A DNA stretch of 63,985 nucleotides, the filler included, from Octopus bimaculoides (Eukaryota): NCBI RefSeq assembly GCF_001194135.2. It is 6 parts of 6 records of this genome, joined end to end, with 100 filler letters (N's around TTAATTAATTAA, not from the genome) between each part and the next. Parts side by side here need not be neighbours in the genome. Positions count along the whole stretch, not along the records: positions 1 to 24,346 come from NC_069002.1; 5 more parts are not named here. One strand, written 5' to 3'. Below, in pieces: positions 15,816-24,827 of the stretch. Both the position numbers and the translations under genes were made by a program. The notes beneath the pieces were generated by a model, which saw only the letters and a list, made by a program, of their open reading frames with translations, was not told the DNA's origin and ran no database searches. How positions within the stretch are numbered: position 1 is the first letter of the stretch; each line of letters starts with the position of its first letter.

Positions 15816-16666
15816 TTAATCCTTTAGTATTTAAATTGGCCATATCTGGCCCAAATATTCTATCTGTTATATCTTCAAACTGGCCAGATCTGGCCTCTCA
15901 CACCTACCCTACAGTGTCATCCTAAAAATCAATCAATCACATCATCAAAATGTCAAAGCTACAAGATAAGGCATGACTAATTTAACCCTTTCGATACCAA
16001 CCCGGTTGGAACTGCCTCTGGTTCTATAGTCTTTGTTATATTCAAAATTAATTGAGAGACTCACAGAGCATCTCAACAGAAATACGGTAAGAAAAGGGGT
16101 AAAATATATAATAGAGAAACAATTCGTAACCCTTTTGATACCAACCTGGCTGAAACCACCTCTGGCTCTGTAGTACAAATGTCTTGTTTTCATAAGTTTT
16201 GAATTAAAATCTTCCACCAAACCTTTGTCACAATTTATGTTCCTAACACTAGCTTAATGATTACTAAGTTATTTTACTAAATTCTTTGTTATATTTAAAA
16301 TTAATTAAAAGAAACACAGAGCATCTCAACAGAAATATGGTAACAAAAGGGTTAAAATATATAATAGAGAAACAATTCTTAACCCTTTTGATACCAAGCC
16401 AACTGAAACCACCTCTGGCTCTGAGTACAAATGTCTTGTTTTCATCAGTTTTGAATTAAAATCTTCCACCAAACCTTAGTCACAATTAATGTTCCTAACA
16501 CTAGCTGAATGATTACTAAGTTATTTTACTAAATTCTTTGTTATATTTAAAATTAATTGAAAGAAACACAGAACATCTCAACAGCAATACGGTAATGAAA
16601 GGGTTAAAACAATGTGAATGAATAAGCAGTACATTAGACAGAATAATCTGAATGCTAAAGGGTGAA
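15816..16666. mobile_element. piggyBac-like MITE (host) carrying a nested insertion
   Basis: TTAATCCTTTAG...CTAAAGGGTGAA ends; uninterrupted homolog at about 20685-20903. Confidence 0.7.
15982..16607. mobile_element. Three tandem copies of a second piggyBac-like MITE (15982-16102, 16126-16355, 16379-16607)
   Basis: TTAA-CCCTTT...AAAGGG-TTAA type termini; identical 23-nt spacer AATATATAATAGAGAAACAATTC between copies. Confidence 0.8.
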
Positions 16667-16894: not shown

Positions 16895-18625
16895 TCTTTT
16901 ACTCTTTTACTTGTTTCAGTCATTTGATTGTGGCCATGCTGGAGCACCACTTTTAGTTGAGCAAATCGACCCCAAGACATATTCTTTGTAAGCCTAGTAC
17001 TTATTCTATCAGTCTCTTTTGCCGAACCTCTAAGTTACAGGGATGTAAACACACCAGCATCAGTTGTCAAGCGATGTTGGGGGGACAAACACAAACATAT
17101 ACACACATCATCATCATCATCATCATCGTTTAACGTCCGCTTTCCATGCTGGTATGGGTTGGACGGTTCAACTGGGGTCTGGGAAGCCAGAAGGCTGCAC
17201 CAGGCTCCAGTCTGATCTGGCAGAGTTTCTACATCTGGATGCCCTTCCTAACGCCAACCACTCCGAGAGTGTAGTGGGTGCTTTTACGAGCCACCGACAC
17301 GACGGCCAGTCAGGCGGTACTGGCAATGGCCATGCTCAAAAAGGTGTTTTTTACGTGCCACCTGCACAGGAGCCAGTCCAGCGGTACTGGCAACGACCTC
17401 GCTTGAATGATTTTCTAACATGCCACCATGCCACAAGTGCTAGAAGGCGACACTGGTAATGATTATGCTCAAATAGTGCTATTTACGGGCCACTAGCATG
17501 GAAGCCAGACACCTGCTCTGGCAATGAACACGCTTGGACAGTGTTGTTAGTGCTCAACTGGCGCAGGTGCCAGTCATCAAATATGGTTCAATTACGATTT
17601 TGATTTCACTTGCCCCAACAGGTCTTCGCAAGCAGAGTTTTTAGTGTCCAATGAAGTAAAGATATGAATAAGTTAGCTGGCTACACTTCTGGCAGAGGTC
17701 ACAGATTATGCTCTCACTTGCCTTGCCGGGTCTTCTCACGTACTGCATATTTCCAAAGGTCCCGGTCACAAGTCATTGCCTCGGCGAGGCCTAAAGTTCA
17801 AAGGCCGTGCTTCACCACCTCATCCCTGGTCTTCCTGGGTCTATCTTTTCCACAGGTTCCCTCAACTGCTAGGGTGTGGCACTTTTTCACACAGTTATCC
17901 TCGTCCATTCTCACCACATGTCCATACCAGCGCAGTCGTCTCTCTTGCACACCACAACTGATGCTTCGTAAGTTCAACTTTTCTCTCAAGGTACTAATAC
18001 TCTGTCGGGTATGCACACTGACATTACACATCCATCGGAGCATACTGGCTTCATTCCTTTCAAGCTTACGCGTGTCCTCAGCAGTCATGGGCCATGTTTC
18101 ACTGCCATGTAGCATGGCTGTTCGTACACATGCGTCATACAGTCTGCCTTTTACTCTGAGTGAGAGTCCCTTTGTCGCCAGCAGAGGTAAGAACTCTCTG
18201 AACTTTGCCCAGGCTATTCTTATTGTAGCAACTACACTTTCAGAGCACCCTCCCCCACTACTAACTTGGTCACCAAGATAGCGGAAGCTATCAACCACTT
18301 ATAGTTTTTCTCCCTGGAATGTGGCAGAAGTTGTTTTCTGCACATTCACAGTGTTTATTGCTCCTGAGCATCTGCCACATACAAAAACTAACTTCCTAGT
18401 TAACCTTCCTTTGATATTGCTGCACCTCTTATGTGTCCATAGCTTACACTGGGTACATCTTATGGAACAACGGGTTTCTTTCAGTTTCCGCCTACCAAAT
18501 CCACTCACAAGGCTTTGGTCGGCCCGAGGCTATAGTAGAAGACACTTGCCCAAGGTTCCATGCAGTGGGACTGAACCAGAACCATGTGGTTGGTAAGTAA
18601 GCTACTTACCACACAGCCACTCCTA
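16895..18625 (-). mobile_element. CORE SINE (family A-I) split into head (18472-18625) and tail (16895-17105) by an RTE insertion
   Basis: The two halves are collinear with the intact copy at 10619-11030 and join at the central microsatellite. Confidence 0.8.
17106..18471 (-). mobile_element. 5'-truncated RTE LINE (ORF2 C-terminus, 3' UTR, (GAT)n tail)
   Basis: ORFs 17798-18298 and 18299-18508: LWTHKRCS...VDSFRYLGD...RIAWAKFRE...LYDACVRTAMLHGSETW...RRLRWYGHVVRM...GKDRPRKT. Confidence 0.92.
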
Positions 18626-18680: not shown

Positions 18681-18806
18681 GTTTCCAAAACCACTGATGC
18701 CGACCAAAAGAAATTACAGAACAACATCCGTGATGACATCAGCAGCTTGATCTCAGCCTACCTCAAGAAATATCTTTTGACTGGATCTACAGCTTTCTTA
18801 GTTCAG
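18681..18806 (+). CDS. TERF1/TERF2: TRF homolog, TRFH domain exon (126 nt, phase 0 to 0)
   Basis: Acceptor ctgtattttttag, donor CAG|gtaatt; VSKTTDADQKKLQNNIRDDISSLISAYLKKYLLTGSTAFLVQ ends like TRF1 KSYVNYVLSEKSSTFLMK. Confidence 0.87.
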
Positions 18807-18957: not shown

Positions 18958-20138
18958 ATGGTTGCATTCATCCTGCCTCCAGACACCATCAATGCATTTA
19001 TAGAGCTTGTGGGTGACGATGATTTGCCACAAGAACTTGTGGCATATTTTGAAATGCATTACATTGGTGAGGGGAGAGGCAGGGGAGCTCGTAGACATAG
19101 AGTTCCTCCTACTTTTCTTATCGGTCTTTGGAATATGTATGGAAGAACCCTATATCAGCTGGAAACACCAACAATGGAGTAGAAGGTTTCCATAATGCAC
19201 TGCAAGAATCTGTTACAAATACTCATCCAAATTTATTGGAACTTATCAATGTCTTAAGAAATGAAGAATCTCTTTCTAAAAAGAAGGTAAACAATGCAAC
19301 AAGAGGAGAAACTGCAACCAAGGAAAAAAACAAAGATGTTTGTAAGCGCATACTAAGCATTGTCAGAGGTTACGATCAAAATCAAAACCAGCATTATTTG
19401 AATGCAATTGCAATGAACTTAGATGATTTTTAGCTTTTTAGTTTTTTAGCTTAACTTTTTAAATAAAGAGTATGATTTAGAAAATTACTATTTTTAAATC
19501 TCACAATGAGAGATATTCAGCAACAGTACTTTGTAGTAAAGATTATTTGCCAACATAACATGGCAGTCCTGGTTTAGGACGAATGTTACTGTAACTTTAG
19601 AAACATTCATCCTAAACCAGGACTGCCATGTTATGTTGGCAGACAGTCTTTACTCCAAAGTACTGTTACTGAATATCTCTCGTTGTGAGATTTAAAAATA
19701 GTAATTTTCTAATTTATAGACCAGTGACTAGTTGTCACTTTGAAAACTATATATTTTGAACGGGAATTTGGCAGTGGCACCTCTATCCAAACAATTATTC
19801 TGTGCTGATGAAGGGAAATAACCTGGAAATCGCGATACAGATATTGTTTTGAAAATATAAGGACACAGATCATGTTGTATAGCCTGCTGGAGAGATGATG
19901 TCTCCCGGGGTTAAATTACAGCAACATTCGTCCTATACCAGGACTGCCATGTTATGTTGGCAGACAGTCTTTACTCCAAAGTGTATGACCTTCATTATTT
20001 TTATTTTTAATTTTATTTTTTATCCTTCTCTTCTTATGCTTTACTACAAAATGTCCTTGCGGTGAAATACCTGTATAGTGAATTGCCTTACAGTGAATAG
20101 TCCTACAGCCAATTGCTTTACGGCGTCTTGTCCTAGAA
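18958..20138 (+). mobile_element. MULE-type transposase C-terminal remnant with probable 3' terminus
   Basis: VAFILPPDTINAF..L..YFEMHYIG...PPTF..GLWNMY.R / TNNGVEGFHNAL...HPNLLELI.VL.NEE with one frameshift, stop at 19433; short GGTGAAAT/AGTGAAT-type tandem motifs at 20045-20138. Confidence 0.75.
19477..19712. repeat. Long inverted repeat (111-bp arms, 14-nt loop) inside the MULE remnant; third arm copy at 19914-19982
   Basis: TTGCCAACATAACATGGCAGTCCTGGTTTAGGA / TCCTAAACCAGGACTGCCATGTTATGTTGGCA. Confidence 0.9.
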
Positions 20139-22243
20139 AAGTGAATGTTAAAATGCTGATGTAATTATTGGATTCCCAGAGGAAGACATTTACTCCAAGA
20201 GCCTACTACTTTTATGAACTCATTTCTTATGTCATTGGTAATTAGTGTATGGTAATGAGATTTCTTTTGATCTTTTTTTTGTCTTCATTTTTATGTCTAT
20301 TTTTCTTTGGTAGCATGGGTTAGGTGAATATATTATTGGCCATTGTTATTACCCCTGGAAAAACAGACATAGAACGGACAAACAAGTAATAAACTGGTAG
20401 TGGAGTGTGAGAAGGGGGTGGATTATCATCATCATCACCATCATCAGCACCATCATCATTATCATTTAAGATCCATTTTCCATGCTGGTATGGGTTGGAC
20501 AGTTTGATAGAAACTTGTAAGGCTTGGGGTTGCACCAGGTTCCACAGTCTGCTTTGACATGGTTTGTACAACTGGACGCCATTCCTAATGCCACCCACTC
20601 CACAGAGTGTACTTGCTGCTTTTGAAGTGACACCACCACCCACACCAACGCTACTTATGTAGTAATTACAGTTTTTGGTACTTACACTGGCCATATCCGG
20701 CCCAAATATTCTCCCTGTTTTATGTTCAAACTGGCCAGATCTGGCCTCTCACACCTATCCAACAATGTCATTCTAAAAATAAACTATCACTTCATCAAAA
20801 TCTCAAAGCTACAAGATAAGGCATTGATTAATTCAAAGCTATGTAAATAAATAAGGGTTGCATCTAACAGAGAACCCTGAATGTGAAACGGTTAAAGGGT
20901 TAAAAGTATTCCTGATTCTGTGTACATTTTGTGTGTAGCTTTGTGGGTGCATCAGTGGAATAGATACCAGTCATATATTGAGGGAGAGGTTTGATTTAAT
21001 TAACTAATGGGTTCCAGGCATGGCTCCGTGGTTCATCATGTTTGCCTCAGTTACTATGTGGTGTTGGGTTCAATCCTACTGCATGGTACCGTGGGGGTAA
21101 ATGTCTTCTACTATTACAGCTTTGAGCTGACCAATGTCTTTGGAGTAGAATTGGTAGCAGAAAACTATATGGAAATCTATCGCATATATACATCTATTTA
21201 TTTCCTCTTATTCCTTTTTGTGGAAGAGCATTGGCTCGAAACGTAAAAGACATTTCCATTCTTTTTGAGCGTCAAACTAATACACTTATTTGTTGTTTCT
21301 ACACAAGTCTTCATCTTTGTTTTTCTATAAATTTGAACTACATCTACATGTATATATATATATATNNNNNNNNNNNNNNNNNNNNNNNNNNNNNNNNNNN
21401 NNNNNNNNNNNNNNNNNNNNNNNNNNNNNNNNNNNNNNNNNNNNNNNNNNNNNNNNNNNNNNNNNNNNNNNTATATAAAGCTGAAGTTGTGTGTCTGTGT
21501 GAAGCCTTTTTAAAAGTTTATAGAAATCCACATTTTCCACTTTTTCGTAAAAATTTTTACATCAATGGAATTTTCTCGATGTGAACTTTCCAGTGCAGTA
21601 ATTAGATTTTTTAAATTCCGTTTACTTTGTGTGATTTAAGGGAGATTTGGCTGTTGTTTCTAGCACCTTTTATATTTCTTCCTTTCTACCTGGAACAGCA
21701 TTCTTACACACGCGCTCAACAGAGAGAGAAAGTGATACATACAACGTCATAGATTAAACTTTACCTATTTTTCATAACATTGATACGCAAAAACACACAC
21801 AACCACACATACGTAATCTGTGCCAACAACATACACATTGCTCCCGTTCTCTATCTCCCCCTCTTCCTCTCTTCCTCTCTCGCTCTCTCAATCGCATACA
21901 CGTGCAAGTAAACACAATCATTCACGTTCGTCAATGTGGCATAACTACAGAGTTGTACTCACCGACTTTGGAAGGTCATAACTTTCAGAAAAAGTCTTGG
22001 TCCCCTGTTATCCCTTCTGTGAGTCCCAACTTTTGTAGATCCTTTCTCACCACTTGCCCTCCCCCATTGCTGGCCTTGTATCAAAATTTGAAACCAATAA
22101 TTCTACCAGCTCACAACTCTCCCTTCCTTTTACAGATTGCGGTCTTTCGTATCAATATAAATAAATCAATTTACGTCTCGTATTCTGAACCATATTCTAA
22201 GTGATGCCTTTAATGGTATCTGTTGTGTGTTTCCTATGTTTAG

Positions 22244-22314
22244 GCTGCCAGCAGAGCACTAGAAACGGAGAAGAAAGACAGTTCTGGTATCGTTGATAGC
22301 CAAAAGAAAATCAG
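22244..22314 (+). CDS. TERF1/TERF2: TRF homolog, end of TRFH domain and start of hinge (71 nt, phase 0 to 2)
   Basis: Acceptor ttcctatgtttag, donor CAG|gtaagt; AASRALETEKKDSSGIVDSQKKI versus TRF1 AAAKVVESKR. Confidence 0.85.
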
Positions 22315-23373: not shown

Positions 23374-23425
<52 letters not shown>

Positions 23426-23955
23426 NNNNNNNNNNNNNNNNNNNNNNNNNNNNNNNNNNNNNNNNNNNNNNNNNNNNNNNNNNNNNNNNNNNNNNNNNNN
23501 NNNNNNNNNNNNNNNNNNNNNNNNNNNNNNNNNNNNNNNNNNNNNNNNNNNNNNNNNNNNNNNNNNNNNNNNNNNNNNNNNNNNNNNNNNNNNNNNNNNN
23601 NNNNNNNNNNNNNNNNNNNNNNNNNNNNNNNNNNNNNNNNNNNNNNNNNNNNNNNNNNNNNNNNNNNNNNNNNNNNNNNNNNNNNNNNNNNNNNNNNNNN
23701 NNNNNNNNNNNNNNNNNNNNNNNNNNNNNNNNNNNNNNNNNNNNNNNNNNNNNNNNNNNNNNNNNNNNNNNNNNNNNNNNNNNNNNNNNNNNNNNNNNNN
23801 NNNNNNNNNNNNNNNNNNNNNNNNNNNNNNNNNNNNNNNNNNNNNNNNNNNNNNNNNNNNNNNNNNNNNNNNNNNNNNNNNNNNNNNNNNNNNNNNNNNN
23901 NNNNNNNNNNNNTTTCACATATCTGTAATTTTTCAGATTAACACCCGCACGATTA

Positions 23956-24126
23956 CCCAACCCTAATCCTAAACCTAATCCTAACACTAACCCTAAACCC
24001 TAACCCTAACCCTAAAACCCTAACCCTGACCCTAAAACCGTAACCGTAACACTAATCCTAACCCTAACCGTAACCCTAAGCCCTAACCCTAAACCCTGAC
24101 CCTAAAACTGTAACTGTAACACTAAT

Positions 24127-24160
<34 letters not shown>

Positions 24161-24190
24161 GACCCTAAAACCGTAACCCTAACACCCTAG
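23956..24190. repeat. Interstitial telomere-like (CCCTAA)n/(TTAGGG)n degenerate array
   Basis: About 18 exact CCCTAA hexamers, longest pure run 3; variant CCCTGACCCTAAAA recurs at 24024, 24094, 24157 (63-70 bp higher-order period). Confidence 0.93.
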
Positions 24191-24827
24191 TGAAAATCGT
24201 GTTATATTTACAAAACATTGACGAACATGAGTTATATTTTACTGAATGATTGTGTACTTGCACGTGTATGCATTTGAGAGAGCGAGAGGGGGAGAAAGGA
24301 ATAGAGGTAGTTAAAAGTTTTCTTATGACGGCTTCTCTTCACTGCCNNNNNNNNNNNNNNNNNNNNNNNNNNNNNNNNNNNNNNNNNNNNTTAATTAATT
24401 AANNNNNNNNNNNNNNNNNNNNNNNNNNNNNNNNNNNNNNNNNNNNTGGGGGGTGGGGGCAGGGGTTGTTTTAATGATGAATAGCTTTAATTAGTCTGTT
24501 ACAACCTGTCACATAGGTGAATGTACCCCGGGGGTAAGTGTGCGGAGAATGGTGTGTGAGGAGGAAGGGGTGTGGTGTAAAAATGATGTTGGGTAGTTTG
24601 TGTTATATACATACGTATATATATATATATATACACACACACACATGAGTGTTTATAGAGAGAGATGTGTATATATGTGTGTATATTTACATATATGTAT
24701 GTATATGTGTGTATATATATATATGCATATGTACATCTGTGTGCGTGCGTGTATATATATATGTGTGTATGTGTATATATACACACGCGCACGCGTAGAT
24801 ACGTCGCATTTATTTACACATGCATGC

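What the first reader, a model, noticed from the sequence alone, without database searches (positions are those of the whole stretch)
23956..24190. Telomere-like TTAGGG array inside an intron of the putative telomere-binding factor gene
Seen: about 18 exact CCCTAA units plus variants with a 63-70 bp higher-order period, 1.6 kb after an exon that ends in a phase-2 donor, so the gene must continue. Established: TRF proteins bind duplex TTAGGG and can occupy interstitial sites. Inference: a possible autoregulatory or telomere-sensing site for the gene's own product; the G-rich strand is the template strand. Caveats: the array's right flank (24216-24290) is a dispersed repeat also found inverted at 21880-21945, so the array may be transposon cargo, and an N gap (23425-23911) separates it from the exon.
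Basis: partly seen in the sequence, partly recalled or inferred. Interest (0 to 1): 0.72.

Follow-up and report, generated by a model that had tools for sequence, protein, structure and literature searches.

The report
Decayed telomere repeat in octopus TRF intron
A real but decayed block of telomere-type repeats lies inside what I show to be the Octopus bimaculoides telomere-repeat-binding-factor gene. It is missing from the same intron in two related octopods, so it is most likely an ordinary interstitial telomeric sequence, not a proven feedback site.

Summary
Positions 23955-24190 carry 18 exact CCCTAA units among variants, in about 3.4 higher-order copies of 63-70 bp. No shuffle came near this count.

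The host gene is O. bimaculoides LOC106873135, annotated as 'uncharacterized protein'. It is a TRF homologue. Its N-terminal domain matches human TRF1/TRF2 TRFH domains (hhalign 96% probability; PDB profile hits). Its Argonauta and O. sinensis orthologues end in a telobox-type Myb domain.

The array lies 1.64 kb past exon 5, and the gene does continue beyond the window. An N gap separates the array from the exon, so linkage rests on scaffolding alone.

The array is not conserved. The orthologous introns of O. sinensis and Argonauta hians have none. It is degenerate, shows CpG-to-TpG differences between copies, and its longest perfect runs are three units.

Best reading: a lineage-specific interstitial telomeric sequence, amplified in blocks and decaying. 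It could bind TRF, but there is no evidence that it regulates the gene.

One curiosity remains. Both other octopod TRF loci carry a different same-strand CCCTAA array within 10 kb. Whether that is chance depends on a genome-wide density I could not measure.

The parts
23955..24190 (+). Degenerate telomere-type array. CCCTAA-like units lie on the gene's sense strand and TTAGGG on the template strand. It holds 18 exact hexamers, 11 YAACCCTAR sites, 5 perfect dimers and 2 perfect trimers.
23955..24023 (+). Higher-order copy 1 (69 nt)
24024..24093 (+). Higher-order copy 2 (70 nt), containing CCGTAA variants
24094..24156 (+). Higher-order copy 3 (63 nt). It has CTGTAA where copy 2 has CCGTAA, a CpG-to-TpG difference.
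24157..24190 (+). Truncated higher-order copy 4 (34 nt)
23426..23912 (.). Assembly gap (487 N) between the exon-bearing contig and the contig that holds the array. The left edge abuts an (AT)24 microsatellite at 23377-23425.
22244..22314 (+). Exon 5 of LOC106873135 (aa 196-218, end of the TRFH domain), with a phase-2 donor
18681..18806 (+). Exon 4 (aa 154-195)
5415..5501 (+). Exon 3 (aa 124-152/153)
2154..2371 (+). Exon 2 (aa about 51-123)
24215..24313 (+). Right arm of a two-copy inverted repeat. It starts 25 nt after the array.
21852..21940 (-). Left arm of the same inverted repeat, upstream of exon 5. No telomere-like sequence lies next to it.

Best explanation
The feature is a lineage-specific interstitial telomeric sequence (ITS) in intron 5 of the O. 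bimaculoides TRF homologue.

Proposed history (inferred, not shown): a run of the species' own telomere motif entered the intron, for example when telomerase healed a chromosome break or through recombination. It then accumulated point mutations and was amplified locally in blocks of about 11 hexamers (63-70 bp) by unequal exchange or replication slippage.

What is shown: the array, its higher-order structure, its decay, the identity of the host gene, and the array's absence from the orthologous intron of two other octopods.

What remains inferred: the mode of origin, its neutrality, and any protein binding. It still carries 11 half-sites of the kind TRF Myb domains recognise, so TRF proteins, including this gene's own product, may bind it incidentally, as shelterin does at some human ITSs. 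Nothing indicates that the site is maintained for regulation.
For: Signs of decay: only 18 of about 36 units are exact; the longest perfect runs are 3 units; higher-order copies are 75-84% identical; CCGTAA in copy 2 corresponds to CTGTAA in copy 3.

TTAGGG is the experimentally determined octopus telomere motif (Adachi 2014, as cited in PMC13218726).

Host gene: the four window exons are 100% identical to XP_052831708.1, LOC106873135 isoform X3. It is TRF-like.

Not conserved: the orthologous intron in O. sinensis and A. hians has no telomere-like array.

Independent ITS formation is seen in Argonauta, where a 66-bp higher-order CCCTAA array begins abruptly inside a truncated SINE copy. Telomere-type arrays therefore arise de novo at arbitrary sites in octopods.

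O. bimaculoides has the most microsatellites of 719 eukaryotes surveyed (PMC6387519).

ITS classes and shelterin binding at ITSs are reviewed in PMC6410037.
Against: All three octopod TRF loci examined carry a CCCTAA-strand array within 10 kb of the gene, on the sense strand. That would be unlikely unless such arrays occur at least about once per 130 kb genome-wide, and I could not measure that density. The array contig is joined to the exon only across an N gap. No orthology anchor exists in the 434 bp visible after the gap, so I cannot tell insertion in O. bimaculoides from loss in the relatives.
Confidence: 0.7

Rival explanations
1. Autoregulatory or telomere-sensing site. The TRF protein binds the TTAGGG array in its own gene. 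The amount of free TRF, or telomere length acting through TRF sequestration or looping, then feeds back on transcription, elongation or splicing. Binding-site position could turn over between species, as happens with enhancers.
For: The gene is a TRF homologue. The array has 11 consensus half-sites. O. sinensis has a 5-unit array 1.35 kb upstream of the ATG (L001 8615-8660). A. hians has a higher-order array of at least 157 bp, 9.85 kb downstream of the stop codon. All three arrays lie on the same strand. Shelterin occupies some genic ITSs in human cells (PMC6410037).
Against: The array is not at the orthologous position in any other species. The Argonauta array lies beyond another gene. The decapodiform TRF locus (29.7 kb, L003 plus L004) has none. 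The array is decaying. No binding or expression data exist. The background density is unknown and could make the co-location trivial.
Confidence: 0.1
2. Mis-scaffolding. The array is genuine octopus DNA, but its short contig was placed into this gap wrongly. It could be subtelomeric or from another ITS, and so not in the TRF intron at all.
For: A 487-N gap lies immediately before it. Only 434 bp are visible after the gap, and none of them aligns to the O. sinensis intron. Repeat-rich short contigs are prone to misplacement (general knowledge).
Against: The only other copy of the array's right-flank sequence lies 2.3 kb away in the same intron neighbourhood, which suggests a local origin. From O. 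sinensis, the expected intron length (3.5 kb) leaves room for the array.
Confidence: 0.12
3. Transposon cargo. The array is an internal or terminal minisatellite of a mobile element and arrived with it.
For: The array ends 25 nt from a sequence that has a second, inverted copy nearby.
Against: That second copy has no array next to it. Similarity stops at CACATTGACGAAC. No further copies occur in about 128 kb of cephalopod sequence held here. No transposase or reverse-transcriptase ORF adjoins it. In Argonauta the array interrupts a SINE and is not part of it.
Confidence: 0.08

Closest known systems
Short or degenerate interstitial telomeric sequences (ITSs) of vertebrates, e.g. human short ITSs and the degenerate 2q14 block
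   Same: Internal tandem copies of the species' telomere hexamer; variable degeneracy; genic or intronic locations are common; they can be bound by TRF1/TRF2 (PMC6410037).
   Different: This one is in a cephalopod. It is organised in a 63-70-bp (about 11-unit) higher-order repeat, whereas a fresh telomerase insertion would be a simple perfect run. It has a single orientation, so it is not a head-to-head fusion ITS. It sits in the TRF gene itself.
Telomere-derived minisatellites or satellites with higher-order units (heterochromatic ITS blocks)
   Same: Variant hexamers fixed in a longer period and amplified as blocks. Argonauta shows a comparable 66-bp unit at 97% identity.
   Different: Only about 236 bp and 3.4 copies here, not a large heterochromatic block. 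The Octopus and Argonauta units carry different variant hexamers, so they look independent.
Vertebrate TRF1/TRF2 (TERF1/TERF2), for the host gene
   Same: An N-terminal TRFH-type helical domain aligned over its full length (hhalign 96.3%, 187 columns), and a C-terminal single Myb domain with a telobox-like NLKDKWR motif in orthologues.
   Different: Only about 19% identity in the TRFH domain. Pfam's TRF model does not detect it. The annotated O. bimaculoides isoform X3 lacks the Myb domain. It cannot be assigned to TRF1 versus TRF2.

Membership tests
Interstitial telomeric sequence (ITS) | Tandem repeats of the organism's own telomere motif | tested here: met
   18 exact CCCTAA units plus variants. 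TTAGGG is the octopus telomere motif (PMC13218726 citing Adachi 2014).
Interstitial telomeric sequence (ITS) | Internal chromosomal position, not a chromosome end | tested here: inconclusive
   It lies between exon 5 and the expected exon 6 of a gene whose orthologues are internal (A. hians locus at 5.9 Mb of a 28.9-Mb contig). However, it is joined to the exon only across an N gap.
Fusion-type ITS | Head-to-head (TTAGGG)n-(CCCTAA)n arrangement | tested here: not met
   All units are in one orientation.
TRF / TERF family (host gene) | TRFH dimerisation domain | tested here: met
The profile hits TRFH-only PDB chains 3bu8_A (2e-4) and 8w8g/3bqo/1h6o (1e-3 to 4e-3). The top six Foldseek hits are TRF1/TRF2 TRFH, but from a weak model (pLDDT 50). 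Pfam's own model gives no hit.
TRF / TERF family (host gene) | C-terminal single Myb domain of telobox type | tested here: met
   Met in the orthologues: A. hians P0003 PF00249 E 4e-9, and P0004 E 1e-6. The best PDB matches are TRF2 and TRF1 Myb domains. The O. sinensis exon at L001 33367-33645 encodes ...NLKDKWRSF.... For O. bimaculoides the exon lies outside the piece, and isoform X3 lacks it.
TRF / TERF family (host gene) | Binds duplex TTAGGG at telomeres | not testable with these tools
   Needs EMSA, ChIP or localisation experiments.
Cis-regulatory (autoregulatory) element | Conserved at the orthologous position in related species | tested here: not met
   No telomere-like array in O. sinensis L001 23301-26817 or in A. 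hians L002 13775-15394.
Transposon-borne array | The same array-flank junction repeated at other loci | tested here: not met
   The only other flank copy (21852-21940) has no array, and there are no other copies in the sequence held. A genome-wide test was not possible.

The most novel reading that the evidence does not exclude
Octopod TRF genes may keep a sense-strand CCCTAA array somewhere within about 10 kb of the gene: intron 5 in O. bimaculoides, 1.35 kb upstream in O. sinensis, and 9.85 kb downstream in Argonauta. The site's position would turn over, while its function would be to give the telomere-binding protein a handle on its own locus, as a dosage or telomere-length feedback.
Probability: 0.1. 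Interest if true: 0.75.

Novelty: new member of a known kind. Interest (0 to 1): 0.35.

Why it matters
If the array is only an ITS, its value is descriptive. It is a clear cephalopod example of a telomere-derived minisatellite with higher-order structure.

The more useful by-product is the gene. LOC106873135 and LOC115229010 are annotated as 'uncharacterized', and they can now be named as the cephalopod TRF homologue (TRFH plus Myb). This gives a shelterin entry point in a group where, according to a 2026 cuttlefish genome paper, only the telomere motif of one octopus has been determined experimentally.

If the recurrence of arrays at TRF loci proved non-random, it would be a rare case of a telomere protein wired to its own gene through telomere-like DNA. 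That could be tested directly with ChIP and deletions.

Tried and rejected
- **Exon 2 alone as a protein query:** no hit, although P0001 contains it. This is a word-index limitation.
- **Pfam and PDB searches with single exons or the joined 166 aa:** no TRF hit, only weak designed-armadillo matches, rejected as helical-repeat noise.
- **Regex search for a Myb/telobox in six frames of the window:** none found. The exon lies outside the piece.
- **AlphaFold2 with 2 sequences:** pLDDT 38, unusable. With 6 sequences: pLDDT 50, used only as weak support.
- **Final profile search of the big protein database:** returned only P0003.
- **Fetching the O. bimaculoides locus from another assembly:** isoform X3 and a window ORF are not on record.
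- **Getting control octopod loci to measure background ITS density:** The neighbouring zf-CCHC gene is single-copy. Three reconstructed models of the 331-aa Argonauta neighbour were not exact matches.
- **Literature searches for octopod ITS counts:** nothing found.
- **Rfam and tRNA scans of the window:** nothing found.
- **A shared origin for the Octopus and Argonauta higher-order units:** rejected, because the variant hexamers differ.
- **The array as a SINE tail:** rejected, because in Argonauta the array replaces the 3' part of a SINE.

Full report
**Observation.** Positions 23955-24190 read as a run of CCCTAA-like hexamers on the + strand. There are 18 exact CCCTAA units, all between 23961 and 24182. 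The rest of the 24.3-kb piece has none, and only one TTAGGG. Tandem Repeats Finder reports a period-6 array (36.3 copies, 77% matches) and a period-70 array (3.6 copies, 83% matches). CCCTAACCCTAA with at most one mismatch occurs 16 times, all inside the array, against 0.09 expected from shuffles. Cutting at the recurring anchor CCCTGACCCTAAAAC gives higher-order copies of 69, 70, 63 and 34 nt. The three full copies are 75-84% identical to one another. The array holds 11 matches to YAACCCTAR, the C-strand form of the YTAGGGTTR site of TRF Myb domains. It also holds five perfect dimers and two perfect trimers, so the longest perfect runs are short. Copy 2 has CCGTAA where copy 3 has CTGTAA, the pattern expected from CpG decay. 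The N gap is 23426-23912 and follows an (AT)24 run.

**The gene.** Splice-site scanning found four + strand exons: 2154-2371, 5415-5501, 18681-18806 and 22244-22314. Their joined translation is 100% identical to XP_052831708.1, 'uncharacterized protein LOC106873135 isoform X3 [Octopus bimaculoides]' (272 aa). It is 75% identical to LOC115229010 of O. sinensis. P0001 has 54 further residues, so the gene continues beyond the piece.

**Is it a telomere-binding factor?**
- Pfam and single-sequence PDB searches said nothing.
- An exhaustive HMMER search found two longer relatives: Argonauta hians GAB1607677.1 (516 aa, E 4e-51) and a 394-aa transcript product. Both carry the same N-terminal helical domain plus a C-terminal Myb domain (PF00249, E 4e-9 and 1e-6) with an NLKDKWR telobox-like motif.
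- A profile of the four proteins has TRF2 (1e-10) and TRF1 (4e-8) as its best PDB matches. It makes separate significant hits to TRFH-only chains (3bu8_A 2e-4; 8w8g, 3bqo and 1h6o 1e-3 to 4e-3) and to Myb-only chains (TRF2 4e-7).
- hhalign of the N-terminal domain against human TRF1+TRF2 TRFH gives 96.3% probability over 187 columns, end to end.
- A weak AlphaFold model (pLDDT 50) has TRF1/TRF2 TRFH as its top six Foldseek hits.
- In O. sinensis a Myb exon (…KLWTEEQEEEFYEAVKLMGVGKWAEIRDYLGTQRSNVNLKDKWRSF…) lies at L001 33367-33645, downstream of the truncated annotated model.

**Position of the array.** In O. sinensis the intron after the orthologous exon is 3.5 kb long (L001 23301-26817). In O. 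bimaculoides the array begins 1.64 kb after exon 5, so an intronic position is what one would expect. However, the array sits on a contig joined only through the N gap. None of the 434 bp visible after the gap aligns to the O. sinensis intron. I could not retrieve another O. bimaculoides assembly.

**Conservation.** The orthologous intron has no telomere-like array in O. sinensis or in A. hians (L002 13775-15394).

**Flank.** The right flank has one inverted partner upstream of exon 5 (21852-21940 against 24215-24313; 85% over 73 nt, partly low-complexity). Similarity stops at CACATTGACGAAC, 25 nt from the array, and the partner has no array beside it. No other copy exists in the window or in the related loci. 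'Transposon cargo' is therefore not supported, although it has not been tested genome-wide.

**An unexpected recurrence.**
- O. sinensis has a five-unit CCCTAA run 1.35 kb upstream of the start codon (L001 8615-8660).
- A. hians has an array of at least 157 bp with a 66-bp higher-order unit (97% identity), 9.85 kb downstream of the stop codon and cut by the end of the fetched locus.
- Both have the C-rich strand on the gene's sense strand, as in the window.
- The Argonauta array starts abruptly inside a truncated SINE copy. Its variant hexamers differ from those of Octopus, so the arrays arose independently.
- A decapodiform TRF locus (29.7 kb, L003 plus L004) has none. Neither does an extra 6 kb upstream in Argonauta.
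- That makes two arrays in about 104 kb of independently fetched sequence. For this to be unremarkable, such arrays must occur at least about once per 130 kb genome-wide.
- O. bimaculoides is the most microsatellite-rich of 719 eukaryotes surveyed (PMC6387519), so a high density is plausible. I found no motif-specific count and could not fetch control loci.

**Interpretation.** The anatomy is degenerate units, block amplification, CpG decay and lineage-specific presence. This fits a neutral interstitial telomeric sequence that is decaying and being reshuffled. Such sequences are a known class, and shelterin proteins bind a subset of them, preferentially the longer and better-conserved ones in genic regions (PMC6410037). 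Binding by the octopus TRF is therefore possible but unshown, and regulation is unsupported. I put this reading at about 0.7. The alternatives are a feedback site at about 0.1, mis-scaffolding at about 0.12, and transposon cargo at about 0.08.

**Verdict.** The functional reading is speculative and partly contradicted. Interest is moderate to low, unless a genome-wide count shows that the recurrence at TRF loci is non-random.

Noticed in passing
window 2154-22314 (exons); L001 10001-33645; L002 10001-21278: LOC106873135 (O. bimaculoides), LOC115229010 (O. sinensis) and GAB1607677.1 (A. hians) are all annotated as 'uncharacterized', but they are the cephalopod TRF homologue (TRFH plus Myb/telobox). 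The O. sinensis 227-aa model is truncated and misses exon 6 onward, including the Myb exon at L001 33367-33645.
   Followed up: yes
L001 8615-8660: A short interstitial telomeric run (about 5 CCCTAA units) lies 1.35 kb upstream of the O. sinensis TRF start codon, on the same strand as the window's array.
   Followed up: partly
L002 31121-31278 (cut by the locus end): Argonauta hians has a CCCTAA-type array with a 66-bp higher-order unit (97% identity) 9.85 kb downstream of its TRF gene. It begins inside a truncated SINE copy at ...GGGATTGACAAAAC|CTAACCC.
   Followed up: partly
outside the window (C-terminus of P0001); L001 26818-26981: O. bimaculoides isoform X3 ends ...IWEKVNDFKYFHFFS and lacks the Myb domain. 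Its tail looks like read-through of the exon-6 donor. If translated, such a TRFH-only product might act as a natural dominant-negative form.
   Followed up: partly
window 21852-21940 and 24215-24313: A two-copy inverted repeat brackets exon 5. Pairs like this can promote back-splicing or exon skipping in other animals.
   Followed up: partly
L002 18184-18434: A 33-bp coding tandem repeat (7.6 copies, 97%) encodes RGHSEVTERPD repeats in the linker between the TRFH and Myb domains of the Argonauta protein.
   Followed up: no
window 19471-19718: A near-perfect palindrome with 120-nt arms (92% complementary) and an 8-nt spacer. It looks MITE-like or hairpin-like.
   Followed up: no
window 16030-16609: A 252-bp tandem repeat, 2.3 copies at 92% identity.
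   Followed up: no
window 58-480 (+) and 17801-18340 (-): Two inverted copies (about 90% identical) of what looks like a retrotransposon fragment (conserved VVDSFRYLGDQVSSGGGC... ORF, no Pfam match), plus many copies of a SINE-like dispersed repeat (e.g. 1344-1550, 1672-1878, 3505-3710, 6918-7077, 7150-7307), fill the TRF introns.
   Followed up: partly
window 2154-2371: The word-indexed protein search returned nothing for the 77-aa exon-2 query, although the database holds a protein containing it exactly. Negative results from that tool with short queries are unreliable.
   Followed up: yes
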